From positions 6,758,001-6,822,000 of the forward strand of contig NC_083283.1 in the NCBI RefSeq assembly GCF_963506605.1: DNA of 64,000 nt, written 5' to 3'. Below the pieces are notes generated by a model. The model worked only from the letters and a program-made list of their open reading frames with translations, was not told where the DNA came from and did not search any database. A program made the translations under genes and the position numbers. Each line of letters starts with the position of its first letter. Position 1 is the stretch's first letter. This stretch comes from Zootoca vivipara. Taxonomy: Eukaryota. Shown piece by piece: positions 31,071-55,419 of the stretch.

Positions 31071-31119
31071 TATTGACACAAAGTAGATGAAATGTTGAGG
31101 TTCAATAGCAAGTTAGGAA

Positions 31120-32755: not shown

Positions 32756-32766
32756 CCCGCTAGATA
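32756..32766 (-). CDS. Predicted 11-nt coding microexon B1 (TAT CTA GCG GG; YLAG) of paralogue 1
   Basis: Branch-like CTAAT, ~50-nt AG-free pyrimidine-rich tract, AAG acceptor and GTAAGT donor; bridges phase 0 to phase 2. Confidence 0.62.
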
Positions 32767-33079
32767 CTTCATATTTTTGAAGAAGAGGATTTATGTAAGA
32801 GAAAATAAAATTACAATTAGAATCCAGTTACAGAGGCTACTTTTGGTTTAACAGATTGGTTGTTTATAGCAACTGAGCAAAGAGGTCAAGGGAAAAAAAG
32901 AATGCAAAGATACGGTATTTTAATTTTAATAAAGTGCATTGCAATTTTACAAAGCAAATATACGTACTGAATCATAGTAGATAACATTGGAGAACATTTT
33001 ATAATAGCGTGGTGCATGTATGTTGCATGAGATACTCTTACAGTGCATTCAATATGACCTTAACAGATTGTAGAACTGG

Positions 33080-33463
33080 GCCCAAACAAAATGAATTTCA
33101 ATAGGGGGACCAGTTTCAGGTTCTACACAGTTGCACATATATAAGATAAGGGAAACCTGTCTCGCCACTAGTACATGTGAAAAGGATCTAGGGGTCTTAG
33201 TAGACCAAAAGCTTCACCCGTCAGCCATGTGGTGTAGCAGGAAAAAGCTGCTTCTTTCTAGGCTGCATCAACAGACATATAGTTCCTAATCAAGGGAAGT
33301 AATACTGTAGTTCCATTCTTTTCTGCCTTGGTCAAACCACACCTGTAATACTGTGTCCAGTTCTGGGTGCCACAATTTAAGAATTATATTGAAAAGCTGG
33401 AGCCTGTTCAGGGTGTGTGTGTGACCAAGATAACTAAATAATATGATATTGGGGAGTTGTGAT

Positions 33464-33494
<31 letters not shown>

Positions 33495-33970
33495 GCTGTA
33501 ATTGTGTTGGCACTCAATTTCGTTGTACTACGTTCAATGACAATAAAGTATTTATCTTATATCTTATCTTATCATCTTATCTTATCTTATCTTATATCTT
33601 ATCATCTTATCTTCTTATCTTCTTATCTTCTTATCTTATAATCGGGGGGGGGGGGTCTGGAAACCAAGCCTTATGAGGAATTGTTGAGGGAGTTGGGCAT
33701 GTTTAGCCTGGGGCAGAGGAGACTCAGAGGAAATAGAGAGGAGAACAGAATCGTAGAACTGTAGAGTTGGATAAGACCCCATGGGTCATCTAGTGCAGCA
33801 CCCTTTAGATATTAAAGGGCTGTTACATAGAAGATGGAGCCAACTTGTTTTCTCCTGCCTTGGAGGACAGGACCTGACCCAATGGATGTTGGATGAAAAT
33901 CTACACTGCAGGTGGTAGGACCAGAAGACCGTCAGAGTCCCTTCCAACTCTACAATTCTATGATTCTATG
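33080..33970 (+). mobile_element. Second old CR1 fragment duplicated with the unit (also 43100-43895, 45870-46615, 53200-53995, 55812-56147)
   Basis: EKDLGVLVD, LVKPHL.YCVQFW and QRRLRG remnants; TTCTATGATTCTATG tail. Confidence 0.8.
33432..33637 (+). mobile_element. Rex1-type 3' UTR fragment with (TG)n and (TATCT)n tail inserted in CR1
   Basis: TTTCGTTGTAC..AATGACAATAAAG plus (TATCT)n, as at the 3' ends of the other Rex1 copies; absent at paralogous sites 43483, 46214 and 53582. Confidence 0.7.
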
Positions 33971-34277
33971 TATCTAGAATATATATATATATTTCTTTAC
34001 ACATTATCATTGAATACCTACCTGCTTAACCTTATTTGGTTTTAGGCTTTTAGAATGTTTGGGAGTGTCAATGGCTGAATTGGACAGACAACCGCTTCAT
34101 TTTCTCTTCTGCAAGCTGCTATAAGTGTCAAGCCCCACCCCAACTCATGAAAACATGCAGAGAGAAATTGCCACGATATCAGAAAGTAAGCACCTAAATC
34201 ATCATCATAGAAAAGCAAATGGGGAAGCAATTGAACAAGCAGATCTACAAAGAGAGTTTTTCTGCAAGAGTGCTTAC

Positions 34278-34292
34278 CTTGCTATAATTCAT
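34278..34292 (-). CDS. Predicted start-codon exon A2, coding part (MNYSK), paralogue 1
   Basis: ATG AAT TAT AGC AAG|GTAAGC. The ATG and donor are conserved in all six copies, and four encode an N-x-S sequon. Confidence 0.65.
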
Positions 34293-36525
34293 TATGGGAA
34301 TATCCAAAAAAATGAACTGGTCCCGCAAGAAACCCAAGCTACAGTTGTAGCTAGAACAGCTTCCAACGCATAATAAGCTAGTTAGCAAAGTAATTAAGTG
34401 GAAAACGAAAGAGGAAACTGAATCACCAGCTAATTTTGAAATGTATCCTGGTATTGTCCCAGCATCAACACAGGAAGTCGGTGTTAGAGAAAGAAGAATG
34501 GAGCTTTTAATGTTTACTGTGCTTGATGCCAGGCTGTGCTGTTGTGGTTCACCCCTTTCCTGCTTCATTTGGCCTCCGCACTGATGCACCAAATGAGGAG
34601 ACCCCCAGCGGCAGACGGGGAAGGACAGGAAGCTGTGGACAGGGCCTGCCAGAACATGCCTGGACAGAACAAGAATCCTCATGGAAGATGGCACCTGTGT
34701 TGGGGCACCTGGTTCACACCCTCTCAAAATTGTGTGCCTGGAGCCATGCCACCTCCCCACCTGGCTATAACCATTTCCTTCCTCATGGATAACAAAGTGG
34801 AGTGAGTAATCCATGGGATAGGAAGTGTTCTATCATCTCTAATCCCCCTGGCCCCCAATATGACTATGGATAACTTTTTTGATTGATTAGCCACTTGTTA
34901 CATATGACATATGTTCAGAGGCATGTAGAGGAGTGTTCATAGTGGCAAGTCCAGGTGTAGGAATTTCATCAAATTTCATCTGAAATGAACATTTGAAGAA
35001 AATGTTGGGGTAGTCCTTTCATGCAAAACATCTAAGCAATATTTTTGAGTTTTATACATCAAGTCTTAAAGATGGTGTGATGATGATGATTTTTTCTTCC
35101 TCATTTTGCTGGCAGATTGTCCCTCGGGGAAGCACCCCTCTCCTTTTTACTGACGATTCAGTTTCTGCAAGAGCTTGTGTTTTTCAAGAAGTTTCCTTGA
35201 TATGAGGTTTGTTACATATGCTTCATTATCAGCTTTCAACCGCAGGAAGTATCTCACCAGTTAATCTGCTGATTTGTGTGCATAGTTGCCATGGCCAAAT
35301 CTCTTCAAAAACTAGCATTGTGTTGTCAAGAGCATTTGTCCTGTAACTGCATGCATTTTTGGGTGTGTATCAGAGTGCAGAATCAACAATATGGTTTATT
35401 CCCCTCACTCCCAAATAGTAGATACAGTGCTACCTCTGGTCAAGAACTGAATTCGTTCCGGAGGTCCGTTCTTATCCTGAAACCGTTCTTAACATGAGGT
35501 ACCACTTTAGCTAATTGGGCCTCCTGATGCCACCGTGCTGCCGCCGTGCAATTTCTGTTCTCATCCTGAGGTAAAGTTCTTAACCCGAGGTACTACTTCC
35601 AGGTTAGTGGAGTCTGTAACCTGAAGTGTTAGTGGACAATGGCACTTGTGACATTTTTGTGTGATGATGGTGGCCCAGCCACTTGAAATTCTGCTGCTCC
35701 CTGCACTGATGTCACTTAGATATAAGCTAAAAACAGATTTTTCCATAGACTTTTGGAAATAGTTGTTAACACTCAGCAGGCCTGGGTTTGATAAAATTAC
35801 AGGATCATTCTAATCCAAGGCCTGTAGGAATTAGCAAATTTGGAATAGGTGGACTTTAGGCTACACCAACATAGCTCAACCTGGCTCTGCTCCTGGTTCA
35901 ACCAGAGGTCCACTGCAGTGTAAGATCTGACAAATCTTGCCATATAGGCTGTTAGCAACATGCAGGGTGGCCTGAAAACAGCTCGCTCCAGTGAGTGTTA
36001 GGGAGTCATTCATCCACAAACAGGGAGAAGTTTCCAGAACAGTCGTATATAAGTGGGAGAGGCACTCCGAGCATGCACAGCTTCAGTTGTAAGTGCCAAT
36101 AAAAGGAGAACTAGACGACTGACTGTTGAATGATTGTGTAAAATTGTCATTATTGTTTCACTGTACCTTTAAGAGTCAGGAAAGATCTAGTGGCTGGAGT
36201 TCTGCAGCTGTGGAGCACCTCCGCAGGTGTTGCTGTGAAGCTGATGATGCAGGGTATATCAGGGGTGTTGTGTGTTGCCTCTGTGCTGGGCGATTTCCCA
36301 GTGTGCTCTTGGTGGGTGGTTTGGTTGTGTGGGTGGTTTGTGTAAGCCTAATTTATTTTTTGATATTTTTACTTTCTCCATTAAACCAAGCATTTGTTTA
36401 AGTCTTGGTGAGACTCTATGTGTAAGTCCCTCAGCCAGCTTCTGCTGATGCAACTCAATTGCTTCTAACCCTAACATCTTGGTTATGGGCCCAGTGGTTG
36501 AGCGTGGAACTGCACATGTTATAAT

Positions 36526-36529
<4 letters not shown>

Positions 36530-36573
<44 letters not shown>

Positions 36574-37099
36574 TTATTATTTATACCCCGCCCATCTGGC
36601 CGGGTTCCCCCAGCCACTCTGGGCGGCTTCCAAAAAAACAGAAATTCTAAAATACAGAAATCCATCAAACATTAAAAGCTTCCCTAAACAGGGCTGCCTT
36701 GAGATGCCTTCTAAAGGTGTGGTAATTGTTCTCTTTGACCTCTAGTGGGAGGGCATTCCACAGGGTGGGTGCCACTACCGAGAAGGCCCTCTGCCTGGTT
36801 CCCTGTAACTTGGCTTCTCGTAATGAGGGAACCGCCAGAAGGCCCTCGGAGCTGGACCTCAGTGTCCGGGCAGAACGATGGGGGTGGAGACGCTCCTTCA
36901 GGTATACCGGACCGAGGCCGTTTAGGGCTTTAAAGGTCAACACCAACACTTTGAATTGTGCTCGGAAACGTACTGGGAGCCAATGTAGGTCTTTTAGGAC
37001 CGGTGTTATGTGATCTCGACGGCCGCTCCCAGTCACCAGTCTAGCTGCCGCATTCTGGATTAGTTGTAGTTTCCGGGTCACCTTCAAAGGTAGCCCCAC
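36530..37099 (-). mobile_element. L2 LINE 3' end inserted between the Copia PBS and gag
   Basis: KLQLIQNAAARLVTG..DHITPVLKDLHWLPVRFRAQFKVL peptide; (AAT)n tail. Confidence 0.9.
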
Positions 37100-37186
37100 A
37101 TTAGTTTTTGGAGAAAGGTTTAGAAAGGTTTTTTCCCTCTTTTCTGCTGCAACGGTTTTGTGGGCTGGTGGTTGAAAAGTTCCAGC

Positions 37187-38977
37187 ATGGCAGACCGTAT
37201 TGCTGAGGCTGAGAAGGCTTTAACATTCCCGCAACTAACGGCCGAGAACTACAGCTTATGGTCCTTTCGCATGGAAGCACTTCTGACTTCCCGTGATGTG
37301 TGGAAGTACGTGACCGAGGACCCTCCTGCTGCTCCTGTGACCGAAGCCTGGTCGAAAGGTGATGCTAAAGCAAGGGCATTAATTAACTTGGCTGTTAGTG
37401 ATCAGCAAGTTGTGTACATAAGAAATAAGAAAACTGCCAAAGAAATGTGGGACAGTCTTGCGGCAGTGCATGTTAGAAAGGAGTCAGCGTCTGCCCTAAC
37501 ATTTTTTAAACGCCTGTACCAGACAAAGCTGCAGCCTGGAGGCGACCTGGCAGCACATTTAAGACGTCTGGAGGCGATAGGCGGCGAACTAATTCAAAGA
37601 GACGTAGATATAACTGACATTCAATATGTGTTTATTATTCTTTGTTCTCTTGGTGAAGACTTTGATGCCATAGCTAGCCAGATATCTGCTGTACCTCCAG
37701 CACAATTAACTGTGGAAGGGGTAACAGCAAGATTGATGGGCGAGCTGGACAGAAGGGAGGCTTGTGGGATTAGCACTCCTATTTCTAAAAATAATGAGGA
37801 ACGCCGTATTCAAGTCTGCGGTGATTCATCTGCCTTCAAAACTTCCAAGCATTGCTGGTTTTGTAAAAAGCAGGGGCACCTTGCGAGGGACTGCAAATTT
37901 AAAAAGCAAAATGCTTCAGGGTCCGTTCCAGTTCGTAAATCACAGACAGCAACCCAGCAGTCGGCAGCACATAGTAAAGATGGACGTGAGCCGCGAGCGT
38001 TCCATGTTCGTGAATTAGGTCGTAAAGTAATTAAAGATGACACGTGGAAATCGTTTGTAGTAGATTCCGGGGCGTCAATTCATCTTTGTAATGACCGAAG
38101 TCTGTTTGTTTCTTTCGAAGAGGAAATTGGCACCATTCATCTGGCCAACTCCAACGTTCTACAGTCGCTTGGCAGAGGTACTGTGAAACTTGACTCCTTA
38201 AATATCACAATAGCAAATTGCACTTATTGCCCATCAGTGGACAATTTATTATCAGTAAGTTGCTTTGCACGCCAAGGAGTAACTGTGTGCTTCACAAAAT
38301 CACTATGTGAGTTCTACAAAGGGGGAAAGCGTGTATTGTATGCCAGAGAGTCTGAAGGTTAATATAGACTATATTTTAAAAAGCATTCACAGCCACCTGT
38401 GAACTGTAGAGTAACCCAGCCAAGGCAAGGGTTGAGAAAAAGGCAGGGGCTGAGAAATGTAAAGCCTCACTCCGGATGTATTCATGAGGCGCATAGACTT
38501 TTGGGACATTTAAATTTCACAGATGTGATAAAGACAGAGAAGATTGTTGATGGACTAAACTTGAAGCCATGTAAATGCTATATGCATTGTGTATCTTGTT
38601 GTAAGAATAAGATTAAGGTTGCAAGAAAGGGTAAATGCTCAGGCAGGAAAGTAACAGAGCCATTTGAACGTGTGCATTGTGATTTAGTAGGGCCACTCCC
38701 TCCTTCTTTAGGAAATTCAAAATATTGGCTTACTCTTATTGATCAGTACAGCAGATATTGTTTTGTTTACACCATTGCTGAAAAGTCACAAGCACTTGAG
38801 AAGTACAAGATTTTTTGCAACTGGGTAAAAACCCACTTTAACAAACCTATAAAGCATTTATTTTCTGACAGAGGAGGAGAATTTATTTCTGAGGATTTTT
38901 CACATTTCCTGGAAGCGCAGGGGACTGCTCACGAGTTGTCCTGCCCTAGAAGTCCTTGGCAGAATGGGATTGTAGAA
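37187..38977 (+). pseudogene. Copia gag-pol reading frame with one in-frame stop (38360-38362), truncated in the integrase core
   Basis: ORFs 37160-38362 and 38399-39031 share a frame; EG*YRL corresponds to the usual GLYxL motif. Confidence 0.85.
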
Positions 38978-39505
38978 CCACTGCTGGTTCATGACTGCCA
39001 ATTGACTGTGTCTGCCTCCACCACTGCTTAAAAGAAAGAAGGGCTGAAACTTAAGTATGCCATTACAGCTATTGCTATAATGATTGTAAATAATGATACC
39101 ATGACAAGTTTATGAGCAGTCAAGCAATAAATCACTTGACTGAGTGTTACGGCATCTGTGTTTCTTCTCAAAGTGTAGCTTCAATTGCTGACTACTGCTT
39201 CTCAGAAACTCTGCTAAATGGATGGAAGCGGCTAACAAGTTGGCTACCCACAAGTACACCCATGGAGTGAAAATGTGATGGACTGTGACTTTTCAATAGT
39301 GAGTTAGTGTGTGCTGTTCAGAAAGGACTGGAGTCAGATGCAAAGTACAATGAAATTGAAAGATTTATTTAAATTGCAGCTGAGAAATGATTAAGATAAA
39401 ACTCTGTGATATAAGAATGAAAAGAATACATAAATGAAATGCAAGTGAGCATTGGAGAAATGAAAAAGAACAACAGATAAACAAAAAAGAACAATATAAG
39501 ATGCA

Positions 39506-39556
<51 letters not shown>

Positions 39557-40040: not shown

Positions 40041-40956
40041 TTAAGTTGCTATCATAACCAAGTTTTCAGTTTTGGATACCGATTCTTCCTCATCCTTGAA
40101 AATCCTCTGGAGTGCAACTTTCATGGAGACCCTGGACTGGCCCTTCTTCTGCCTCCTCCCTACTAGGAAATAGATCACCGGGTTGACACTACAATTCAGA
40201 GAGGCACACACAAAGCCAACTTCCAATAGAATCATATTGTTCTCATTAAAATAGATGGCAGTGTAAATGGCATTTAGTGGGAAGGCAAAGATGAGGAAGA
40301 AAAGAAGGGTAAGCAAAATAGTGGTGAGCAGCTTCCCACGCTGCTTCTGATCTGATTTGCAGCAGACTTTGAGAGTCAGTATCAGAGTGGAGGTGATCAT
40401 CAGAGGAGTGCAAATGAGGGCATTTACAATAAGCTGGTACACTAAGTTAGAGTTTGGAAAGCTCTGAGTCAGTAGGAGAGTAAGGTGAATGCCTGAGAGC
40501 AGGAAAGAGAGGGACCAAATCAGGGCACAGATAATGGTGGATAAACGTGGTGGTCGGTGGCATCGATGCCAAAGTGGGAAGAGGACAGCCACAGACCTGT
40601 CGATGCTGATGGCTGTCAGTAGAAACTGGCCCGCAGAATACGTGAAGAAAAATAGTTCAAATAATACTTTTCTGATCAAAACAGCAACATGGGATTTCTC
40701 ATAGAGAGTTACAATAGGCAAAATAATACTGAGGAGAGCTGCAAGGACACCAAAGTCAGCGATGGAGAGGTTCAGGATGTAGGTGGTGAAAGGATTCCTC
40801 TTAATGTGGAAGCCCAGAAGCCGGATGACCATTCCATTCCCCAGGAAGCCAAAGATGCAGATGATGATAATTATGCTGTTGGCAATGCTTTGTGCTAACT
40901 TCAAAAAAACAGTTGAGCCATCATCTGAATCACCTTTTTTCTTAAAATCTAGTTCC
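40041..40956 (-). CDS. MAS/MRGPR-like GPCR paralogue 2, main 7TM exon (predicted 348 aa long form)
   Basis: Near-identical to paralogue 1; acceptor TCTCTTCCAG at 40957-40958, phase 2; N-terminal ELDFKKKGDSDDG. Confidence 0.9.
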
Positions 40957-42317
40957 CTGGAAGAGATAAAAAGATCTCAGTCAGTACCTGATATGTATTA
41001 ATTTGGATGATGTCTAGGTTCACTTTCATTAACTCTAAAGTCAGCATGGCCTAATCAGTGATCAATCTCATCAGCAAAGAGATAATAGCACTTTCTTCTT
41101 GTCTAAATCGATACCTGAGTCGCTATGGCAGTACACATTTTCCTGGAACCTTCAAAGTAAACTGGTAGCTTTTCCATTTTTACTACTATTGAGTAAATAT
41201 TGACACAAAGTAGATGAAATGTTGAGGTTCAATAGCAAGTTAGGAAATAGCTAGCACTATTCAAGGCTGCATCAACAGAAGTATAGTGGCAGGATTGAGG
41301 GAAATAATAGTACCACTCTATTCTGTCTTGGTCGGACCACATCTGGAATACTGTGTCCAATTCTGGGCACCCCAATTTAAGAAGGATTTTGACAGGCTGG
41401 AACATGTGCAGAGGAGGGCAACCAAGATGATCAAGAGTCAGGAAACCAAGCCTTATGAGGAGCAGTTGAAGGTATGTTTAGCCAGAAAAAGAGGAGACTG
41501 AGAGAAGATATGATAGCCATCTTCAAATATCTTAAGGGCTCTCACATGGAAGAGAATAGGACTCAAACCAATAGCTTCAAGTTGAAGGAGATTCTGACGA
41601 AACATTCCAAAAAACTTTATGACAGTTAGAGCCGTTCAACAGTGGAACAGACTCCCTCATGAGATTATGGACTCCCCTTCATTGGAGGCTTTTAAGCAGA
41701 GGTTGGATGGCCATCTGTCATGGATGCTTTAGCTGAGATTCCTGCATTACCGGGGGTTGGACTAGATGACCCTTGGGGTCCTTCCAAGTTGATCTTATCA
41801 CAAAATAAGGGAACTTTGAGTTTCAAAGCAAGGCAGTATCATACCCCAACTTTCTCAGTTAGGAAATGATTCTCATAACAGGGAAAACATTTTTCCCAGA
41901 GGTTTTCCTGGAAAACTACAAATTCAAAGACATTTCCAAATAAAGAGAAAGCACCATTTTTTTCTTTAATCCAAAATTGTTGGTTTATGTTAATCCAACT
42001 GAATGAAGTGTGTTCATTTTTCGAAACAGCACGAACAATACATTTTTTAAAAAGAAAGTCACACTAACATATTATTAAATATTATATGAAGTTATTTCTT
42101 TTTAATTGAAATTGCTGCAGAAATGTAGAGAATTCAAATCGTGAGAAATTGAGAGAACCGAAAATGGAAATCTCCACCTATCCCTATGGAGACTATAAGA
42201 TGAAGTTATGGTCCTGTATTAATCACATATGCTGTGCCACATCTTTAATCTTAGGTGTGTGTTGAAGTTAATGTATACAGTGCATGAACAAGAAATTATT
42301 GTTTAAAATGCACTTAC

Positions 42318-42328
42318 CACGCTATATA
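42318..42328 (-). CDS. Predicted 11-nt microexon B2 (TAT ATA GCG TG; YIAW)
   Basis: Same flanks as B1: AG-free tract, ATGAAG| ... |GTAAGT. Confidence 0.6.
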
Positions 42329-42566
42329 CTTCATTTTTTTTGAAGAAGAAGACGAGGATTTATGTAAGAGAAAATAAAATTACAATTAGAATCCAGTTAC
42401 AGAGGCTACTTTTGGTTTAATAGATTGGTTGTTTATAGCAACTGAGCAAAGAGGTCAAGGAAAAGAAAGAATGCAAAAATACGGTATTTTAATTTTAATA
42501 AAGTGCATTGCAATTTTACAAAGCAAATATACGTACTGAATAATAGTAGATAACATTGGAGAACAT

Positions 42567-42570
<4 letters not shown>

Positions 42571-42602
<32 letters not shown>

Positions 42603-43048
42603 TATTATTTATACCCCGCCCATCTGGCTGGGTTTCCCCAGCCACTCTGGGCGACTTCCAACAGAAAATTAAAACACAATAATCTATTAAACATTAAAAG
42701 CCTCCCTGAACAGGGCTGCCTTCAGATGTCTTCTAAAAGTCTGGTAGTTGTTTTCCTCTTTGACATCTGTTGGGAGGGCGTTCCACAGGGCAGGCGCCAC
42801 CACCGAGGAGGCCCTCTGCCTAGTTCCCTGCAACTTGGCATCTTGCAACGAGGGAACCGCCAGAAGGCCTTCGGTGCTGGACCTCAGTGTCCGGGCAGAA
42901 TGATGGCGGTGGAGACACTCCTTCAGGTATACTGGACCGAGGCCATTTAGGGCTTTAAAGGTAAGCACCAACACTTTGAATTGTGCTCGGAAACGTACTG
43001 GGAGCCAATGTAGATCTTTCAAGACCAGTGTTATGTGGTCTCGGCGGC
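42571..43048 (-). mobile_element. L2 LINE 3' end
   Basis: DHITLVLKDLHWLPVRFRAQFKVL; (AAT)n tail; empty site at ~33005. Confidence 0.9.
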
Positions 43049-44193: not shown

Positions 44194-44278
44194 CGGGCTA
44201 CCATTCATTTTGGGAATATCCAAAAAAGAAACAGCTGAGCCATCATCTGAATCAGCTATTTTCTCAAAATATAGTTCC
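44194..44278 (-). CDS. Predicted 85-nt chimeric exon (7TM-exon 5' end fused to ATG-exon 3' end): ELYFEKIADSDDGSAVSFLDIPKMNGSP
   Basis: Acceptor TCTCTTCCAG (44279-44280), donor CCG|GTAAGC (44192-44193); 1+84 nt, no stop. Confidence 0.6.
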
Positions 44279-44723: not shown

Positions 44724-44732
44724 ACTGCCGTA

Positions 44733-44768
44733 TATCTGAAGAAGTGTGCATGCACACGAAAGCTCATA
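44733..44768 (+). ncRNA. Minimal hammerhead ribozyme motif (plus-strand arm)
   Basis: TAT-CTGAAGA-A-GTGTGCATGCACAC-GAAA-GCTC-ATA. Confidence 0.6.
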
Positions 44769-45533
44769 CCAAAATAAAAACTTAGTTGGTCTTTAAGGTG
44801 CTACTGAGGGACTGTTCAAGGCTGCATGAACAGAAGTATAGTGGCAGGATTGAGGGAAGTAATAGTACCACTCTATTCTGTCTTGGTCGGACCACATCTG
44901 GAATACTGTGTCCAATTGTGGGGACCCCAATTTAAGAAGGATTTTGACAGGCTGGAACATGTGCAGAGGAGGGCAACCAAGATGATCAAGAGTAAGGAAA
45001 CCAAGTCTTGTGAGGAGCAGTTGAAGGTATGTTTAGCCTGAAAAAGAGGAGACTGAGAGAAGATATGATAGCCATCTTCAAATATCTTAAGGGCTGTCAC
45101 ATGGAAGAGAATAGGACTCAAACCAATCTGTCATGGATGCCTTAGCTGAGATTCCTGCATTACCGGGGGTTGGACTAGATGACCCTTGGGGTCCTTCAGA
45201 GTTGATCTTATCACAAAATAAGGGAACTTTAAGTTTCAAAGCAAGGCAGTATCATACCCCAACATTTTTTTACCCCAACAGGTTTTTCACAACCTCCCCC
45301 CTCCCCTCCAAGACTCCTCAAATTTCTGCAGAAATATAGAGAATTCAACACCTGAGAAATTGAGAGAACCGAAAATGGAAATCTCCACCTATCCCTATGG
45401 AGACTATAAGATGAAGTTATGGTCCTGTTTTAATCACATATGCTGTGCCACATCTTTAATCTTAGGTGTGTGTTGAAGTTAATGTATACAGTGCTAATAC
45501 CGAACAAGAAATTTTTGTTTAAAATGCACTTAC

Positions 45534-45553
45534 CCCATTAGTCCAGTTATAGG
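45534..45553 (-). CDS. Predicted 20-nt microexon B3 (CCT ATA ACT GGA CTA ATG GG; PITGLMG)
   Basis: Same flanks as the other B copies; 9 nt longer, so the phase is preserved. Confidence 0.6.
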
Positions 45554-46633
45554 CTTCATTTTTTGGGGGGAAAAAGAGGATTCATGTAATAGAAAATAAA
45601 ATTACAATTAGAATCCAGTTACAGAGGCTACTTTTGATTTAACAGATTAGTTGTTTATAGCAACTGAGCAAAGAGGTCAAGGAAAAGAAAGAATGCAAAA
45701 ATACGGTATTTTAATTTTAATAAAGTGCATTGCAATTTTACAAACCAAATATACGTACTAAATCATAGAAGATAACATTGGAGAACATTTTATAATAGTG
45801 TGGTGCATGTATGTTGCATGATATACTCTTATAGTGCATTCAATATGACCTTAACAGATTGTAGAACTGGGCCCAAACAAAATGAATTTCAATAGGGACC
45901 AGTTTCAGGTTCTACACAGTTGCACATATATAAGATAAGGGAAACCTGTCTCGCCACTAGTACATGTGAAAAAGATCTGGGGTCTTAGTAGACTTAGTTT
46001 CACCTGTCAGCCATGTGGTGTAGCAGGAAAAAGCTGCTTCTTTCTAGGCTGCATCAACAGACATATAGTTCCTAATCAAGGGAAGTAATAGTTCCATTCT
46101 TTTCTACCTTGGTCAAACCACACCTGTAATACTGTGTCCAGTTCTGGCTGCCACGATTTAAGAATTATATTGAAAAGCTGGAGCCTGTGCAGGGTGTGTG
46201 TGTGACCAAGATAATCGGGGGTCTGGAAACCAAGCCTTATGAGGAATGGTTGAGGGAGTTGGGCATGTTTAGCCAGGGGCAGAGGAGACTCAGAGGAGAT
46301 AGAGAGGAGAACAGAATTGTAGAACTGTAGAGTTGGATGAGACCCCAAGGGTCATCTAGTGCAGCACCTTTTATATTTTAAGGGCTGTTACATGGAAGAT
46401 GGAGCCAACTTGTTTTCTCCTGCCTCGGAGGACAGGACCTGACCCAATGGATTGAAGTTGCAAGAAAGGAGATTCCAAATAAATATCAGAAAGAACTTTC
46501 TGACAAGAAGAGCTGTTTAATCTTGGCATTTTTTAAGGAGAGGTTGGATGAAAATCTACACTGCGGGTGGTTGTACCAGATGTCCATCAGAGTCCCTTCC
46601 AACTCTACAATTCTATGTATCTAGAATATATAC

Positions 46634-47104: not shown

Positions 47105-47119
47105 CGTGCTATCATTCAT
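47105..47119 (-). CDS. Predicted start-codon exon A4, coding part (MNDST), paralogue 2
   Basis: ATG AAT GAT AGC ACG|GTAAGC. Confidence 0.62.
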
Positions 47120-48119: not shown

Positions 48120-49135
48120 AACTAGCATTGTGTTGTCAAGAGCATTTGTCCTGTAACTGCATGCATTTTGGGGTGTGTATCGGAGTGCAGAATCAGCAAT
48201 ATGGTTTATTCCTCTCACCCCCAAATAGTAGATTCAGTGGTACCTCTGGTTAAGAACTTAATTCGTTCCGGAGGTCCGTTCTTATCCTGATACCGTTCTT
48301 AACCTGAGGTACCACTTTAACTAATGGGGCCTCCCGCTGCCGCCGTGCTGCCGCCGCGCAATTTCTATTCTCATCCCGAGGTAAAGTTCTTAACCCAAGG
48401 TACTACTTCCAGGTTAGTGGAGTCTGTAACCTGAAGTGTTAGTGGACAATGGCACTTGTGGTTTTTTGTGTGATAATGGTGGCCCATCCACTTGAAATTC
48501 TGCTGCTCCCTCACTGATGTCACTTAGATATAAGCTAAAAACAGTTTTTTCATAGACTTTTGGAGATAGTGGCTAACACTCAGCAGGCCTAGCATTGTGT
48601 TGTCAAGAGCATTTGTCCTGTAACTGCATGCATTTTTGGGGTGTGTATCAGAGTGCAGAATCAATAACATGGTTTGTTCCCCTCACCCCCAAATAGTAGA
48701 TACAGTGGTACCTCAGGTTTAGAACGTAATTTGTTCCGGAGGTCCGTTCTTTCCCTGAAACCGTTCTTAACCTGTGGTAACACTTTAGCTAATGGGGCCT
48801 CTCGCTGCCACCGTGCATCTGGCACACGATTTCTGTTCTCATCCTGAGGTAAAGTTCTTAACCTGAGGTACTTCTTCCAGGTCAGTGGAGTCTGTAACCC
48901 GAAGTGTTTGTAACCCGAGGTGTTTTTAAACTGATGTACCAGTGTACTCCAATCTGAAATCTCTGGCTGGGTCTTTTATCTGGAAAATGGCACTTGTGAC
49001 ATTTTTGTGTGATGATGGTGGCCCAGCCACGTGAAATTCTGCTGCTCCCTGCACTGATGTCACTTAGATATCAGCTAAAAACAGATTTTTCCATAGACTT
49101 TTGGAGATACCGTAGTTGTTAACACTCAGCAGGCC
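48120..49135. repeat. Local ~470-540 bp tandem duplication containing a Tigger-type MITE (partial at 48235, full at 48703-48945)
   Basis: CTAGCATTGTGTTGTCAAGAG...ACACTCAGCAGGCCT occurs twice; it is single copy at 35312-35785. Confidence 0.8.
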
Positions 49136-50502
49136 TGGGTATGGTATACTTACAGCATCATTCTAATCCAAGGCCTGTAGGAATTAGCAAATTTCGAATA
49201 GGTGGACTTTAGTTTACACCAACATAGCTCAACCTGGCTTGGCTCCTGGTTCAACCAGAGGTCCACTGCAGTGTAAGATCTGACAAATCTTGCCATATAG
49301 GCTGTTAGCAATATGCAGGGTGGCCTGAAAACAGCTTGCTCCAGTGAGTGTTAGGGAGTCATTCATCCACAAACAGGGAGAAGATTCCAGAACAGTCGTA
49401 TATAAGTGGGAGAGTCACTCCGAGCATGCACAGCTTCAGCTGGAAGTGCCAATAAAAGGAGAACTAGATGACTGACCACTGCTGGTTCATGACCTGCCAA
49501 TAGACTGTGTCTGCCTCCATCATTGCTTAAAAGAAAGAAGGGCTGAAACTTAAGTATTCCATTACAGCTATTGCTATAATGATTGTAAATAATGATACCA
49601 TGACCAGTCAAGCAATAAATCACTTGTCTGAGTGTTACGGCATATGTGTTTCTTCTCAAAGTGTAGCTTCTATTGCTGACTACTGCTTCTCAGAAAATCT
49701 GCTAAATGGATGGAAGCGGCTAACAAGTTGCCTACCCACAAGTACACCCATGGAGTGACAATGTGATGGACTGTGACTTTTCAATAGTGAGTTAGTGTGT
49801 GCTGTTCAGAAAGGACTGGAGTCAGATGCAAAGTACAATGAAATTGAAAGATTTATTTAAATTGCAGCTGAGAAATGATTAAGATAAAACTCTGTGATAT
49901 AAGAATGAAAAGAATACATAAATGAAATGCAAGTGAGCAATGGAGAAATGAAAAAGAACAACAGAGAAACAAAAAAGAACAATATAAGATGCATATAATT
50001 ATTATTATTATTATTAATCCATTGTGTCTTCAATTAGTATACCACCCTATATCTTTAGATATCAGGGCTGTTCTCAGCCACTGCAGTCAGCGTGAGCAAG
50101 GGACTGTGGTCATGGATGTGGCTATGCCAATCCATCATGTCCCACTGCTGTCTAACTTGGAGTTGTGTTCTTTGTCCAGTCTACTTGTGTGCTTTCTTAA
50201 ATGCTGAGACGTCAATCAACATTATGGCATGGGGAGGTGGTGGGGAGAGAATCTTTAGCCCAACCCTTCTAAAAATATAGGGGTGAAGAAGGCTACGCTC
50301 AAGTAGACCTTCTGTCCAAAGCCCATCTCCACAGTCTTGCTCAATCCAAAGCAAATGTTACAATACAAAACTCCTAGTTTGAATTTCCTATGTTGGACAA
50401 TAGATAGAAAGGCATTAAAATAAGTCATTCACACCACAGACTACACTCTGTACATTATTGTGCTTATGATAATAAAGAATTGGTTAGTCCTGCCTTAAGG
50501 CA

Positions 50503-51427
50503 TTAAGTTGCTATCATAACCAAGTTTTCAGTTTTGGATGCCGATTCTTCCTCATCCTGGAAAATCCTCTGGAGTGCAACTTTCATGGAGACCGTGGACT
50601 GGCACTTCTTCTGCCTCCTCCCTACTAGGAAATAGATCACCGGGTTGACACTACTATTCAGAGAGGCACACACAAAGCCAACTTCCAATAGAATCATATT
50701 GTTCTCATTAAAATAGATGGCAGTGTAAATGGCATTTAGTGGGAAGGCAAAGATGAGGAAGAAAAGAAGGGTAAGCAAAATAGTGGTGAGCAGCTTCCCA
50801 CGCTGCTTCTGCACTGATTTGCAGCAGACTTTGAGGGTCAGTATCAGAGTGGAGGTGACCATCAGAGGAGTGCAAATGAGGGCATTTACAATAAGCTGGT
50901 ACACTAAGTTAGAGTTTGGAAAGCTCTGAGTCAGTAGGAGAGTAAGGTGAATGCCTGAGAGCAGGAAAGAGAGGGACCAAATCAGGGAACAGATAATGGT
51001 GGATAAACGTGGTGGTCGGTGGCATCGATGCCAAAGTGGGAAGAGGACAGCCACAGACCTGTCGATGCTGATGGCTGTCAGTAGAAACTGGCCCGCAGAA
51101 TACGTGAAGAAAAATAGTTCAAATAATACTTTTCTGATCAAAACAGCAACATGGGATTTCTCATAGAGAGTTACAATAGGCAAAATAATACTGAGGAGAG
51201 CTGCAAGGACACCAAAGTCAGCAATGGAGAGGTTCAGGATGTAGGTGGTGAAAGGATTCCTCTTAATGTGGAAGCCCAGAAGCCGGATGACCATTCCATT
51301 CCCCAGGAAGCCAAAGATGCAGATGATGATAAAGGCACTGTTGGCAATGCTTTGTGCTAACTTCAAAGAAACAGCTGAGCCATCATCTGAAACTCCAGAA
51401 TAGCGAGTTGGATTTTCATACTCTATC
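50503..51427 (-). CDS. MAS/MRGPR-like GPCR paralogue 3, main 7TM exon (predicted 361 aa long form)
   Basis: Near-identical 7TM; acceptor TCTCTTCCAG at 51428-51429, phase 2; N-terminal IEYENPTRYSGVSDDG. Confidence 0.9.
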
Positions 51428-51755
51428 CTGGAAGAGATTACAGAACATTATGTATAAACAGAGGAGGGCAACCAAGATGATCAAGAGTCAGGAAACCAAG
51501 CCTTATGAGGAGCAGTTGAAGGTATGTTTAGCCTGAAAAAGAGGAGACTGAGAGAAGATATGATAGCCATCTTCAAATATCTTAAGGGCTGTCACATGGA
51601 AATGAATAGGACTCAAACCAATAGCTTCAAGTTGAAGGAGATTCTGATGAAACATTCCAAAAAACTTTCTGACAGTTAGAGCCGTTCAACAGTGGAACAG
51701 ACTCCCTCATGAGATTATGGACTCCCAATCATTGGAGGCTTTTAAGCAGAGGTTG

Positions 51756-52041
51756 CTCCCTGGAAGGACAGATCGTGAAGTTGAAGCTGAGGCTCCAATA
51801 CTTTGGCCACCTCATGAGAAGAGAAGAATCCTTGGAAAAGACCCTGATGTTGGGAAAGATTGAGGGCACTAGGAGAAGGGGACGACAGAGGACAAGATGG
51901 TTGGACAGTGTTCTCGAAGCTACGAACATGAGTTTGACCAAACTACGGGAGGCAGTGCAAGACAGGAGTGCCTGGCGTGCTATGGTCCATGGGGTCACGA
52001 AGAGTCAGACACGACTAAACGACTAAACAACAACAACAACA
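51756..52041 (+). mobile_element. RTE-BovB LINE 3' end inserted in CR1
   Basis: LQYFGHLMRREESLEKTLMLGKIEGTRRRGRQRTRWLD; (CAA)n tail; 12-bp TSD AAGCAGAGGTTG. Confidence 0.93.
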
Positions 52042-52876
52042 AAGCAGAGGTTGGATGGCCATCTGTCATGGATGCTTTAGCTGAGATTCCTGCATTACCG
52101 GGGGTTGGACTAGATGACCCTTGGGGTCCTTCCAAGTTGATCTTATCACAAAATAAGGGAACTTTGAGTTTCAAAGCAAGGCAGTATCATACACCAACAT
52201 TATCAGTTAGGAAATGATTCTCATAACAGGGAAAACCTTTTTCCTAGAGGTTTTCCTGGAAAACTACAAATTCAAAGACATTTCCAAGTAAAGAGAAAGC
52301 ACCATTTTTTTTCTTTAATCCAAAATTGTTGAATTATGAATCTAAATGAATGATCAAGTTAATCCAATTTAATGTTGCAATGATGCTTTTCATAATTGCA
52401 GAACTAGTCATTGGGGGAGTGGGATTTGAATCTCCTTGCATTTTACTTAGACATTACCTAATTTAAACTTCCTGAACCAATATGCAAACAACAACATTTT
52501 CTTTGAAATTCATATTTACCCACATTTTTGGATGAAGTTCTCCAACTAAAGTGTTTACAAAAAAATGCATGTATTTTGGGAATATGCTTGTAAAAGTGTG
52601 TTCATTCTTCAGCACAAATGATACATTTTTTAAAAAGAATGTCACACTAACAGATTTTTACATATTACATGAAGTTATTTCTTTTTAATCCAAATTGTTG
52701 CAGAAATGTAGAGAATTCAAAACCTGAGAAATTGAGAGAACCCAAAATGGAAATCTCCACCTATCCCTATGGAGACTATAAAATGAAGTTATGGTCCTGT
52801 TTTAATCACATATGCTGTGTGTTGAAGTTAATGTATATAGTGCTGAACATGAAATTATTTTTTAAAATGCACTTAC

Positions 52877-52887
52877 CACAGTCGAGT
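52877..52887 (-). CDS. Predicted 11-nt microexon B4 (ACT CGA CTG TG; TRLW)
   Basis: Same flanks as the other B copies. Confidence 0.6.
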
Positions 52888-54297
52888 CTTCATTTTTTTT
52901 AAAGAGGATTTATGTAAGAGAAAATAAAATTACAATTAGAATCCAGTTACAGAGGCTACTTTTGGTTTCACAGATTAGTTGTTTATAGCAACTGAGCAAC
53001 TGAGCAACTGAGCAAAGAGGTCAAGGAAAAGAAAGAATGCAAAAATATGGAAGTTTAATTTTAATAAAGTACATTGCAATTTTACAAACCAAATATATGT
53101 ACTGAATCAAAGTATATAACATTGGAGAACATTTTATAATAGCGTGGTGCATGTATGTTGCATGAGATACTCTTACAGTGCATTCAATATGACCTTAACA
53201 GATTGTAGAACTGGGCCCAAACAAAATGAATTTCAATAGGGATCAGTTTCAGGTCTACACTTAGGCAGGAAAAAACCAGTTGCACATATATAAGATAAGG
53301 GAAACCTGTCTCACCACTAGTACATGAGAAAAGGATCTAGGGGTCTTAGTAGACCAAAAGCTTCACACGTCAGCCATGTGGTACAGCAGGAAAAAGCTAC
53401 TTCTTTCTAGGCTGCATCAACAGACATATAGTTCCTAATCAAGGGAAGTAATATTGTAGTTCTATTCTTTTCTGCCTTGGTCAAACCACACCTGGAATAC
53501 TGTGTCCAGTTCTGGGTGCCACAATTTAAGAATTATATTGAAAAGCTGGAGCCTGTTCAGGGTGTGTGTGTGACCAAGATAATCGGGGGTCGGGAAACCA
53601 AGCCTTATGAGGAATTGTTGAGGGAGTTGGGCATGTTTAGCCAGGGGCAGAGGAGAATCAGAGGAGATAGAGAGGAGAACAGAATTGTAGAACTGTAGAG
53701 TTGGATGAGACCCCAAGGGTCATCTAGTGCAGCACCCTTTAGATATTAAAGGGCTGTTACATGGAAGATGGAGCCAACTTGTTTTCTTCTGCCTCGGAGG
53801 ACAGGACCTGACCCAATGGATTCAAGTTGCAAGAAAGGAGATTCCAAATAACTATCAGGAACAACTTTCTGACAAGAAGAGCTGTTTAACCTTGACATTT
53901 TTAAAGCAGAGGTTGGATGAAAATCTACACTGCAGGTGGTAGGACCAGAAGACCCTCAGAGTCCCTTCCAACTCTACAATTCTATGATTCTATGTATCTA
54001 CAATATATATATTTCTTTACACATTATCCTTGAATACTTACCTGCTTACCCTTATTTGGTTTTAGGCTTTTAGAATGTTTGGGAGTGTCAGTGGCTGAAT
54101 TGGACAGTCAACCTCTCCATTTTCTCTTCTACAAGCTGCTATAAGTGTCAAGCCCTACCCTAACTCATGAAAACATGCAGAGAGAAATTGCCACGATATC
54201 AGAAATTAAGCACCTAAATCACCATCATATAAAAGCAAATGGGGAAGCAATTGAACAAGCAGATCTACAAAGAGAGTTTTTCTGCAAGAGTGCTTAC

Positions 54298-54418
54298 CGT
54301 GCTATCATTCATTATGGGAAAAAAGGCACTGTTGACAATGCTTTGTGGTAACTTCAAAGAAACAGTTGAGCCATCATCAGAATCTCCAGAATAGTGATTT
54401 TGATTGCCATACTCTAGC
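54298..54418 (-). CDS. Predicted 121-nt chimeric exon: LEYGNQNHYSGDSDDGSTVSLKLPQSIVNSAFFPIMNDST
   Basis: Acceptor TGTCTCCTCCAG (54419-54420), donor ACG|GTAAGC (54296-54297); 1+120 nt open, consistent with ORF-track 54265-54456. Confidence 0.6.
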
Positions 54419-54780
54419 CTGGAGGAGACAACAGGATATCTTTTCTGGATATACACTAACTATAGGATATCATCAAAAGTCAGGATTATCCAATTGCGAA
54501 AAGATAATGTGATTTTCTTCTTGTCTAGTTCAACACTTGTGTAGCTAAGGTACTACACAGTTTTCGCAAGTCTTCAAAATAAGCTGGTTGGTAGCTTTTA
54601 ATTTTATTATTTTTTTAAAAAAAATATTTTTAATGGTTTTCTTTTCACATAAGACATATTCAATGTCATCATTTAACATCCATTTTCTAGTTTCCCCTCC
54701 TCTTTGACTTCCCCCAACTTCCATTTCTGGTTTATTACTCCAAATGTTACATTCTGCTGTTTATACATAATGTTCTGTTA

Positions 54781-54989
54781 TCAAAACAAAATAAAAAAAA
54801 TTCTTTCCAATAGCACCTTAGAGACCAACTAAGTTTGTTGCTGGTATGAGCTTTCGTGTGCATGCACACTGCACACGATAGGTCATACCAACAATAAACT
54901 TTGTTGGTCTCTAAGGTGCTACTGGAAGGAATTATTTTTTATTTTGTTTTGACTACAGCAGACCAACACGGCTACCTGCCTGTAACTAG
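54781..54989. mobile_element. Penelope-like inverted terminal-repeat insertion (hammerhead cores deleted at the centre)
   Basis: Inverted arms meeting at GTGTGCATGCACAC-T-GCACAC; flanking duplication GTTCTGTTAT. Confidence 0.8.
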
Positions 54990-55408
54990 TTCTGTTATGA
55001 CTAATTGTATTTCCTGTTCTCTGTAAATAAAGTTGAAAATATTGATTTCATAGAATCATAGAGTTGGAAGAGACCACAATGGCCATCCTTTCTAACCCCC
55101 TGCCAAGCGGGAAACACCATCAAAGCATTCCTAACAGATGGCTGTCAGGAATTTAAATCCTGCCAATAGCTTTTCAATTTTTGAAACAACTAAACTGATA
55201 TCTTATCACAAAATAAGGGAAGTTTGAGTTTCAAAGCAAGGCAGTATCATATCCCAACATTATCAGTTAGGAAATGATTCTCATAACAGGGAAAACATTT
55301 TTCCTAGAGGTTTTCCTGGAAAACTAAAAATTATTCTTAGGTGTGTGTTGAAGTTAATGTATACAGTGCTAATACTGAACAAGAAATTATTGTTTAAAAT
55401 GCACTTAC

Positions 55409-55419
55409 CTCGTTATATA
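55409..55419 (-). CDS. Predicted 11-nt microexon B5 (TAT ATA ACG AG; YITR)
   Basis: Same flanks as the other B copies. Confidence 0.6.

What the first reader, a model, noticed from the sequence alone, without database searches (positions are those of the whole stretch)
32756..55419. Five hypervariable microexons embedded in highly conserved intron flanks
Seen: between invariant ATGAAG| and |GTAAGTGCATTTTAAA the five copies read TATCTAGCGGG, TATATAGCGTG, CCTATAACTGGACTAATGGG, ACTCGACTGTG and TATATAACGAG. These are far more divergent than the surrounding intron, yet the only length change is +9 nt and none has an in-frame stop. Each has a CTAAT branch-like site and a ~50-nt pyrimidine-rich tract with no AG before the acceptor. 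Inference: exon divergence above intron divergence with frame preservation suggests diversifying selection on a 4-7 residue patch of the ectodomain (ligand or pathogen contact).
Basis: partly seen in the sequence, partly recalled or inferred. Interest (0 to 1): 0.82.

Follow-up and report, generated by a model that had tools for sequence, protein, structure and literature searches.

The report
Hypervariable coding microexon in lizard receptors
An 11- or 20-base coding exon near the start of tandemly duplicated Mas-related receptor genes of a lacertid lizard differs five to six times more between gene copies than the introns around it, which most likely means selection keeps the outer tip of each receptor different while the rest of the copies stay alike.

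Summary
Five copies of a roughly 450-bp block on the minus strand carry an invariant ATGAAG and an invariant GTAAGTGCATTTTAAA.

This patch is the most divergent 11-column window among 924 columns that align in all five copies. Mean pairwise difference is 0.41 against 0.07, and the permutation test gave 5 of 20000.

The window is from Zootoca vivipara and holds three Mas-related receptor (MRGPRH-like) genes. The patch, B, is coding exon 2. It lies between a tiny first coding exon A (M-N-x-S-x) and the large receptor exon C, and it encodes 4 to 7 residues of the extracellular N-terminal tail.

RefSeq models already splice B in frame, so the exon is not new. Its excess divergence appears undescribed.

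The copies have exchanged sequence. Informative sites support different groupings in the intron and in the receptor body (p = 2.5e-4).

My best reading is selection keeping B different against a recently duplicated or homogenised background. This is the pattern known from primate L/M opsin genes.

Direct RNA proof of inclusion is indirect only. No ligand or pathogen contact is shown. The finding is a modestly interesting new example of a known pattern.

The parts
32756..32766 (-). Microexon B1 (TATCTAGCGGG; Y L A G with the first base of exon C1)
   Evidence: matches residues 6-9 of RefSeq XP_060133570.1 (MNYSK|YLAG|ELYFEK)
42318..42328 (-). Microexon B2 (TATATAGCGTG; Y I A W)
   Evidence: RefSeq XP_060134167.1 starts MKYIAW|ELDFKK using the upstream ATGAAG as start
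45534..45553 (-). Microexon B3, 20-nt form (P I T G L M G). Its extra 9 nt resemble the intron segment TAACTGGATTCTAAT 55-70 nt upstream.
52877..52887 (-). Microexon B4 (ACTCGACTGTG; T R L W)
   Evidence: residues 67-70 of RefSeq XP_060134168.1 (..MNDST|TRLW|IEYEN), which maps 100% to the window
55409..55419 (-). Microexon B5 (TATATAACGAG; Y I T R)
   Evidence: contig geometry in run X3 fits the splice A5-B5-chimeric exon
32684..33119 (-). Duplicated B block, copy 1: intron 3' end with CTAAT, AG-free tract, ATGAAG, B, and donor GTAAGTGCATTTTAAA. The other copies lie at about 42245-42575, 45456-45908, 52816-53252 and 55331-55775.
34278..34292 (-). Exon A1, coding part (ATG AAT TAT AGC AAG = MNYSK), donor GTAAGC
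47105..47119 (-). Exon A3, coding part (MNDST), upstream of B3
56330..56347 (-). Exon A5, coding part (MMDYYE), upstream of B5. An X3 contig is laid on 56398-56330 and stops exactly at this donor.
44194..44278 (-). Chimeric in-frame exon between B3 and B2: the start of a C exon fused to an A exon (ELYFEKIADSDDGSAVSFLDIPKMNGSP)
54298..54418 (-). Chimeric in-frame exon between B5 and B4 (LEYGNQNHYSGDSDDGSTVSLKLPQSIVNSAFFPIMNDST)
29440..30400 (-). Exon C1: receptor body of gene 1 (7TM), acceptor ccag|G
40041..40956 (-). Exon C2: receptor body of gene 2
50503..51427 (-). Exon C3: receptor body of gene 3, with a type II N-tail start (IEYENPTRYSG)

Best explanation
B is a real 11-nt (once 20-nt) coding microexon. 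It is exon 2 of three tandem MRGPRH-like (Mas-related) receptor genes of Zootoca vivipara.

Gene 1 reads A1-B1-C1. Genes 2 and 3 carry a duplicated 5' module and probably read A3-B3-chimeric exon-B2-C2 and A5-B5-chimeric exon-B4-C3.

A supplies the start codon and an N-x-S glycosylation sequon. B adds 3 codons and 2 bases, and the first G of the next exon completes the fourth codon. Together with the first residues of C they form the extracellular tail before TM1.

The copies are young or are kept alike by exchange between paralogues (unequal crossing-over, gene conversion). Introns and the 7TM body therefore differ by only 3-8%. B and the free positions of A stay far more different because selection favours, or protects, distinct N-terminal tips.

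Shown: the anatomy, the frames, the excess divergence and the mosaic history. Inferred: selection as the cause, inclusion of all five B exons in mRNA, and any role in ligand contact.
For: Anatomy and frame:
- The acceptor ATGAAG|, the donor |GTAAGT and the C acceptor ccag|G are present in all copies.
- A (15 or 18 nt) plus B (11 or 20 nt) always ends in phase 2, which is the phase exon C needs. Both chimeric exons translate without stops.

Annotation: RefSeq models XP_060133570.1 (MNYSK|YLAG|ELYFEK) and XP_060134168.1 (..MNDST|TRLW|IEYEN) contain B and match the window exactly.

RNA:
- In run X3, intron bins next to B5 have zero depth, and contigs stop at exon edges: 56330, 54420 and 51428.
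- The unlaid tails of 11, 28 and 40 letters fit a k-1 = 30 overlap only if B5 and B4 are included.

Family: Pfam 7tm_1 starts at residue 39-42 of exon C. The best solved relatives are MAS1 and MRGPRD/E/X1/X2/X4. The best database hits are lacertid MRGPRH-like proteins.

Divergence:
- B is the top window of 924 columns (0.41 against 0.072; 5 of 20000 shuffles).
- The coding part of exon A is the next real peak (0.32). There the N and S codons of the sequon do not vary among A1, A3 and the two chimeric exons, while the x positions do.

Exchange between copies:
- Informative sites favour (g1,g2) in the B block and intron (32:19) but (g2,g3) in the exon C body (9:30); Fisher p = 2.5e-4.
- Synonymous difference between C2 and C3 is 0.022 in the body against about 0.20 in the N-tail part.
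- The three Zootoca bodies cluster together (support 91/91) although their N-tail types are shared with Lacerta and Podarcis.

The same signature, exons more diverged than introns through conversion plus selection, is documented for gibbon L/M opsins (PMC3213168). Positive selection is reported for mammalian MRG receptors (PMC3221663 and its references 22 and 23).
Against: - No read or contig letters across a B junction were seen, so inclusion rests on contig geometry and on RefSeq models that may be partly computational.
- The two true RNA-seq runs laid (X20, X21) barely cover the gene.
- Eleven bases give no power for dN/dS. All four or more changes among B1, B2 and B5 are non-synonymous, but that is expected about one time in three by chance.
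- AU tests of N-tail type against body phylogeny are weak (p = 0.14 and 0.0485), and a Sawyer-type run test is not significant globally (p = 0.12).
- The 3' splice site is weak: AAG after an A run.
- In solved MRGPR structures the pocket is formed by helices and loops (own knowledge), so a tail tip is not an obvious ligand contact.
- Orthologous DNA from other lacertids could not be fetched.
Confidence: 0.6

Rival explanations
1. The B block is an alternative first coding exon. Transcription starts in the block, the invariant ATG AAG is the start codon, and the variable letters encode residues 3-6 (or 3-9) of a shorter protein that begins MK. The AG of ATGAAG is not used as an acceptor, or is used only in some transcripts.
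For: ATGAAG is in the same frame as B and C, since 17 or 26 nt ends in phase 2. RefSeq XP_060134167.1 (MKYIAW|ELDFKK), XP_034980342.1 and Lacerta agilis XP_033012040.1 (MKNVSVRLW|IEY) start there. The context is A-rich with A at -3. The AAG acceptor behind an A run is weak. X1 contigs cover the B4 block and its flanks at depth 4-6.
Against: Two RefSeq models splice an upstream exon onto exactly this AG. Exon A keeps its own ATG, its N-x-S sequon and a GTAAGC donor in four of five copies, and A is out of frame with C unless B lies between them. The X3 contig geometry fits A5-B5 joining. The X1 coverage also extends into the intron downstream of B4, as unspliced RNA would. Both forms may coexist, and the variable residues are the same in either.
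Confidence: 0.2
2. No selection is involved. The N-terminal tip is functionally free, and B is a local mutational hotspot (templated insertions, slippage next to the A/T-rich tract, CpG decay) that outruns the flanks.
For: The extra 9 nt of B3 look copied from the intron 55-70 nt upstream: TAACTGGA--CTAAT against TAACTGGATTCTAAT, p = 0.0013 for one test, about 0.013 after 10 tests. The pyrimidine/A tract just upstream varies in length between copies. B1, B2, B4 and B5 contain CpG.
Against: Relaxed constraint cannot exceed the neutral rate, yet B is 5-6 times above introns and transposon remnants of the same units. The 6 nt before B and the 16 nt after it are invariant, so a hotspot would need sharp edges at the splice sites. 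Every length change is a multiple of 3 and no stop occurs in five copies. In exon A the variable sites avoid the N and S codons of the sequon. CpG decay could explain at most one or two of at least 10 changes.
Confidence: 0.12
3. B is not an exon. The five patches are non-coding differences inside a duplicated intron or transposon fragment, and the gene models that contain them are prediction artefacts.
For: Gnomon models can be partly ab initio. The first exon of XP_060134168.1 (57912-57947) lies in a transposon-derived ORF and looks spurious. True RNA-seq runs gave almost no coverage.
Against: Exon C has no in-frame ATG before TM1 and opens with a canonical ccag|G acceptor in phase 2, so an upstream coding exon of this phase is required, and B provides it in all five copies. 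All five have perfect GTAAGT donors. Lacertid models from three other species have a homologous short exon at the same place. Contigs of run X3 end at the predicted exon edges.
Confidence: 0.05

Closest known systems
Primate L/M opsin tandem genes: exons more diverged than introns (gibbon study, PMC3213168)
   Same: Both are tandem paralogous class A GPCR genes. Divergence between paralogues is higher in specific exons than in introns. Intron and exon histories are incongruent. The explanation is interlocus gene conversion plus selection against homogenising the functionally distinct sites (compared).
   Different: Here the island is an 11-20 nt microexon encoding the N-terminal tail, not the spectral tuning sites inside the helices. 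There are five copies and three B types rather than two genes. Polymorphism data and GENECONV-grade evidence are missing.
Adaptive evolution of mammalian MRG/MRGPRX receptors (Choi & Lahn 2003 and Yang et al. 2005, cited in PMC3221663)
   Same: The receptor family is the same. Both are lineage-specific tandem expansions with fast protein evolution attributed to positive selection.
   Different: The mammalian genes code the receptor in one exon (own knowledge), and the selected sites reported in PMC3221663 lie in the helices (3.29, 2.56, 2.60). Here the body shows dN/dS of 0.4-0.8, and the excess sits in separate mini-exons of the N-terminal tail.
Vertebrate coding microexons (30 nt or less), including SRRM4-dependent neuronal ones (own knowledge)
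   Same: B is very short, has a very strong 5' splice site (G|GTAAGT) and preserves the frame. MRGPR genes are expressed in sensory neurons in mammals.
   Different: Classical neuronal microexons are among the most conserved exons in vertebrates, whereas this one is the least conserved piece of its locus. No UGC motif lies between the pyrimidine tract and the AG. Tissue specificity is unknown.
Variable 5' exon arrays (clustered protocadherins, UGT1A) (own knowledge)
   Same: Several similar small 5' exons, each with an in-frame ATG and a strong donor, lie upstream of receptor-body exons in the same orientation.
   Different: There is no shared constant exon set; each unit has its own body exon. 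Nothing here shows one-of-many promoter choice or splicing across units.

Membership tests
[quoted passage not shown] | Rhodopsin-family 7TM domain | tested here: met
   Pfam PF00001 at E = 5e-21 to 2e-20 over the full model in C1, C2 and C3
[quoted passage not shown] | Closest characterised relatives are MAS1/MRGPR members rather than other class A groups | tested here: met
   PDB search: MAS1 at 3.8e-48, and MRGPRD, E, X4, X1 and X2 at 1e-41 to 1.6e-33. The next group (C3a, C5a and chemerin receptors) reaches only about 1e-16. Database names are MRGPRH-like or Mas-like.
Coding microexon | Internal exon of 30 nt or less, bounded by an AG acceptor and a GT donor | tested here: met
   11 or 20 nt between ATGAAG| and |GTAAGT in all five copies, with an AG-free tract of 66-75 nt and yTnAy branch candidates
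Coding microexon | Keeps the reading frame with its neighbour exons | tested here: met
   A (15 or 18 nt) plus B (11 or 20 nt) ends in phase 2, and C starts in phase 2. The chimeric exons of 85 and 121 nt restore phase 0. No stops occur.
Coding microexon | Included in mature mRNA | tested here: inconclusive
   RefSeq models include B1 and B4. X3 contigs end at the exon edges with tail lengths that fit inclusion of B5 and B4, but their letters were not shown. True RNA-seq runs had almost no coverage.
Divergence island kept by selection against interlocus gene conversion (L/M opsin type) | Divergence between paralogues is higher in the exon than in flanking introns | tested here: met
   0.41 against 0.072; top window of 924 columns; 5 of 20000 shuffles
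Divergence island kept by selection against interlocus gene conversion (L/M opsin type) | Independent evidence of sequence exchange between the paralogues | tested here: met
   Informative-site topology switches between the intron/B block and the exon C body (Fisher p = 2.5e-4). Homology breakpoints lie at 40929 and 51391 inside exon C. Two chimeric exons exist. A Sawyer-type run test alone was weak.
Divergence island kept by selection against interlocus gene conversion (L/M opsin type) | Homogenised parts group by species while protected parts group by type across species | tested here: inconclusive
   The body tree joins the three Zootoca genes (91/91; 74/92 in a second build), while the N-tail types I and II and the ..RLW type of B recur in Lacerta and Podarcis. 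AU tests are weak (p = 0.14 and 0.0485). No DNA from the other species could be fetched.
Divergence island kept by selection against interlocus gene conversion (L/M opsin type) | Low polymorphism within each copy at the protected sites | not tested
Codon-level positive selection (dN/dS above 1) | Non-synonymous rate significantly above the synonymous rate | tested here: inconclusive
   All differences among B1, B2 and B5 and all variable sites of exon A are non-synonymous, but there are too few sites. N-tail part of exon C: dN/dS 1.4-2.0 between types, on an uncertain alignment. Body: 0.44-0.81.

The most novel reading that the evidence does not exclude
The five A/B modules act as a small array of variable 5' exons. 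Each B has an in-frame ATG and a perfect donor, and all lie in the same orientation upstream of three receptor bodies. Read-through transcripts or alternative promoters could therefore join different B tips, singly or doubled, to different bodies. That would diversify receptor N-termini combinatorially, with selection keeping every B distinct.
Probability: 0.07. Interest if true: 0.7.

Novelty: new member of a known kind. Interest (0 to 1): 0.38.

Why it matters
This would be a clean, very small example of selection acting on a handful of residues at a receptor's outer tip while the rest of a tandem gene family is kept uniform. It points to the N-terminal tail as a functional part of squamate Mas-related receptors, possibly in glycosylation, trafficking or ligand capture. 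That family is greatly expanded in lizards and snakes, and its ligands are unknown.

It also shows that microexons, usually the most conserved exons known, can be the fastest-changing part of a gene.

In practice it warns annotators that these genes need an 11-nt exon to stay in frame, and that current RefSeq models of the locus disagree about the 5' end.

Tried and rejected
1. My first guess was that B is only the tail of a first exon starting at ATGAAG. I downgraded it after finding exon A with its own ATG, sequon and donor and RefSeq models with A-B-C. It is kept as a rival, since both readings share one frame.

2. I tested whether A and B blocks are old duplicates of one another. Local alignment against shuffles gave z of 1.9 or less, except A5-B5 at 3.7, so this is not established.

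3. I searched for further B blocks in the window, for example near the older paralogues at 5-21 kb. None was found.

4. I looked for templated donors for B1, B2, B4 and B5 in their own flanks and found no signal (p of 0.48 or more). Only B3 has one.

5. Strong hypervariability of the exon C start within N-tail type I was not seen. It is only mildly raised, 0.04-0.13 against 0.04-0.07 in the intron.

6. A Sawyer-type gene-conversion run test on the five units was not significant globally (p = 0.12).

7. AU tests of N-tail type clades on the body alignment were weak.

The genome and metagenome collections hold no lizard genomes, so they were not scanned.

9. RNA-seq raw runs X20 and X21 had almost no reads on the exons; coverage came from transposon remnants.

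10. Literature searches found nothing on squamate MRGPR microexons. PMC403691 (Choi & Lahn 2003) is not held in the library.

The joined, spliced protein models were never sent to any search tool; exons were searched and translated one by one by reference.
Full report
**What is there.** The 16-mer GTAAGTGCATTTTAAA occurs five times in the window, always on the minus strand, at 32740, 42302, 45518, 52861 and 55393. By chance 0.12 matches are expected. Aligning about 800 nt around each site shows a shared block of roughly 450 nt. No further copy exists in the window.

**What the locus is.**
- The minus strand carries three long ORFs at 29440-30348, 40041-40904 and 50503-51366, spaced about 10.5 kb apart.
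- They are rhodopsin-family 7TM receptors (Pfam PF00001).
- Their closest solved relatives are MAS1 and MRGPRD/E/X1/X2/X4.
- The Zootoca vivipara model XP_060134168.1 maps at 100% identity to the window, so the window is Zootoca vivipara or something indistinguishable from it.
- None of the three ORFs has an ATG before TM1. Each opens at a canonical acceptor ccag|G whose first base completes a split codon. The exon C starts are 30400, 40956 and 51427.

**Gene model.**
- Each B patch sits 1.4-2.4 kb upstream of an exon C start, or of a chimeric remnant of one.
- About 1.3-1.5 kb upstream of each B lies a second conserved element, exon A. It ends in ATG AAT xxx AGC xxx|GTAAGC, giving MNYSK, MNDST, MNGSP and MNDST. 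In the fifth copy it ends in ATG ATG GAT TAT TAC GAG|GTAAGC.
- A has 15 or 18 coding nt and B has 11 or 20, so A+B always ends in phase 2, as exon C requires.
- Two A exons are fused in frame to the first 70-106 nt of a C exon: 44194-44278 and 54298-54418. These are the chimeric exons of earlier notes s1-853995 and s1-853996. They are 85 and 121 nt long and restore phase 0 for the next B.
- The likely genes are therefore A1-B1-C1, A3-B3-chimeric-B2-C2 and A5-B5-chimeric-B4-C3.
- I checked these frames exon by exon, by reference. I did not send a joined model to any search tool.

**Independent support for B as an exon.**
- RefSeq XP_060133570.1 begins MNYSK|YLAG|ELYFEK, which is A1-B1-C1. XP_060134168.1 contains ..MNDST|TRLW|IEYEN, which is chimeric-B4-C3.
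- XP_060134167.1 instead starts MKYIAW|ELDFKK. It uses the invariant ATGAAG as a start codon, which is in the same frame. The variable letters are therefore read identically in both models.
- Models from Lacerta agilis, Podarcis muralis, P. lilfordi and P. raffonei have a short exon at the same position, between 4 and about 22 residues long. Examples are NVSVRLW, NISRRLW, NISTRLW, ISENFSSIQYQEGVIYLG and ISQNFSIIHCYNGNMGGHPYMG.

**RNA.**
- One search found no run on record as RNA that holds the gene. It did find small contig sets (X1-X4, guessed to be RNA) and three raw RNA-seq runs of the same species.
- X1 and X3 cover exon C3 at depth about 10. They have zero depth in several intron bins, including the bins around B5.
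- In X3, contigs stop at exon edges. An 80-nt contig lies on 56398-56330 (exon A5 up to its donor) and has 11 unlaid letters. A 101-nt contig has 28 unlaid letters, then 54420-54348. A 107-nt contig has 40 unlaid letters, then 51428-51362.
- With k = 31 contigs (own knowledge of the Logan assemblies), neighbouring contigs overlap by 30 letters. The 11 + 19 and 28 + 2 letters give exactly 30 only if the 11-nt B5 lies between A5 and the chimeric exon. The 40 + 1 letters equal 30 + 11 only if B4 lies between the chimeric exon and C3.
- This is consistent with inclusion, but it is geometry and not sequence.

**Is B really hypervariable?**
- I aligned the five units from exon A to beyond B and kept the 924 columns present in all five before homology breaks down.
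- Mean pairwise difference is 0.41 in B and 0.072 elsewhere.
- B needs at least 10 substitutions where 1.9 are expected (Poisson 2.5e-5).
- B is the highest of all 11-column windows, and only 5 of 20000 column shuffles produce a window as high.
- The next peak that is not a homology breakpoint is the coding part of exon A (0.32). Among A1, A3 and the two chimeric exons the N and S codons of the sequon never change, while both x codons do.
- The flanks are not specially conserved. Non-coding parts of the units, transposon remnants included, are 92-98% identical throughout. 'Conserved flanks' therefore means young or homogenised duplicates.

**History of the copies.**
- The exon C body has dN/dS of 0.44-0.81. 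C2 and C3 differ at only 2.2% of synonymous sites in the body, against about 20% in the first 20 codons, although that alignment is uncertain.
- The start of exon C comes in two types. Type I is ELYFEKIGDS (C1, C2 and the chimeric exon at 44278). Type II is IEYENPTRYSG (C3 and the chimeric exon at 54418). Both types recur in other genera.
- Homology between units 2 and 3 runs for 1954 nt and stops at 40929/51391, exactly where the types begin to differ.
- Sites where two genes agree against the third favour (g1,g2) 32:19 in the B block and intron, but (g2,g3) 30:9 in the exon C body (Fisher p = 2.5e-4).
- A protein tree of the body joins the three Zootoca genes (91/91). AU tests against clades by type are weak (p = 0.14 and 0.0485), and a run-length test is not significant globally.
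- Together with the two chimeric exons, this shows that the paralogues have exchanged sequence. How much of the similarity is due to conversion rather than recent duplication stays open.

**Mechanism.**
- Relaxed constraint cannot push divergence above the neutral level of the surrounding introns.
- A mutational hotspot would need edges exactly at the two splice sites. It would also have to respect the frame in every copy and spare the sequon codons of exon A.
- Selection remains the best explanation. Either it drives amino-acid change at the tip of the tail, or it protects old, distinct B types from homogenisation. The recurrence of ..RLW..Y(L/M)G and ..GL(M/G)G endings in other genera favours a share of the second.
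- This is the pattern documented for gibbon L/M opsin genes. There, exons are more diverged than introns, intron trees group by species, and the explanation is gene conversion plus selection against it (PMC3213168).
- Fast, positively selected evolution is also reported for mammalian MRG receptors (PMC3221663 with its references to Choi & Lahn 2003 and Yang et al. 2005), though at helix positions rather than in the tail.

**One mutational detail.** The 9 extra bases of B3 lie within TAACTGGA--CTAAT, which matches the intron segment TAACTGGATTCTAAT 55-70 nt upstream. The p-value is 0.0013 against shuffles and about 0.013 after correction for ten tests. This suggests a templated, microhomology-primed insertion that happened to keep the frame.

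**What is not shown.**
- Inclusion of each B in mRNA was not seen directly.
- The tissue of expression is unknown.
- Any role of the tail tip in ligand or pathogen contact is untested.
- dN/dS at B cannot be estimated.
- Polymorphism at B has not been measured.

**Verdict.** The exon itself is already in RefSeq models; its excess divergence seems undescribed (searches found nothing). This is a new example of a known evolutionary pattern, unusual for being confined to a microexon.

Noticed in passing
window 44194-44278 and 54298-54418 (minus strand): Two chimeric exons fuse the first 70-106 nt of a receptor exon C to an exon A, in frame and without stops. Genes 2 and 3 can therefore carry two B microexons and a tail about 45 residues longer. 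RefSeq XP_060134168.1 uses the second chimeric exon, but with an acceptor 41 nt further upstream (54459).
   Followed up: partly
window 45534-45553 versus 45607-45621 (minus strand): The 9 extra bases of B3 look like a copy of the intron's own branch-site region (TAACTGGATTCTAAT) 55-70 nt upstream. This suggests a templated insertion primed on the microhomology TAAC (p = 0.0013, single test).
   Followed up: partly
window 40929 / 51391 and the three gene units 29440-33100, 40041-42650, 50503-53250: The three genes have a mosaic history. Intron and B block group genes 1+2, while the receptor body groups genes 2+3 (Fisher p = 2.5e-4). The homology breakpoint lies about 30 nt inside exon C. A 150-nt stretch of the body is almost identical in all three genes (0-0.7% difference).
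   Followed up: yes
window 57912-57947 (minus strand): The first exon of RefSeq XP_060134168.1 (MVTVVMVAKPPQ) lies inside a transposon-derived ORF (57642-57950) and looks like a prediction artefact. Run X3 contigs point to exon A5 (56330-56398) as the real upstream exon.
   Followed up: partly
window 20013-20537 (minus strand): This is a remnant of a further paralogue. It is a partial receptor ORF preceded by a degenerate exon A whose coding part carries a stop (ATG GAT TAA G|GTAAGCACTCTT). No B block lies between them.
   Followed up: no
window 4994-6022 (+), 11663-12649 (-), 17700-18680 (+): Three more distant Mas-related receptor paralogues are present. The first two have their own in-exon ATG and no A/B exons. 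The third is split into two ORFs (17700-18350 and 18381-18680) and is probably a pseudogene or an assembly error.
   Followed up: no
window 37160-39031 (+), 23903-26766 (+): Transposon ORFs are present. One is a gag/zinc-knuckle/protease-like ORF followed by an integrase-like ORF, inserted in unit 1 only. The other is a LINE-type reverse-transcriptase ORF run. These were observed only and not analysed.
   Followed up: no
proteins P0043, P0029, P0032 (snake homologues): Snake MRGPRH/Mas-like models have long N-terminal tails rich in N-x-S/T. Some contain repeated short modules, for example GNVSIQDIYEYDIGNASIQDIYDYSD. Modular mini-exon tails may therefore be general in squamate members of this family.
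   Followed up: no
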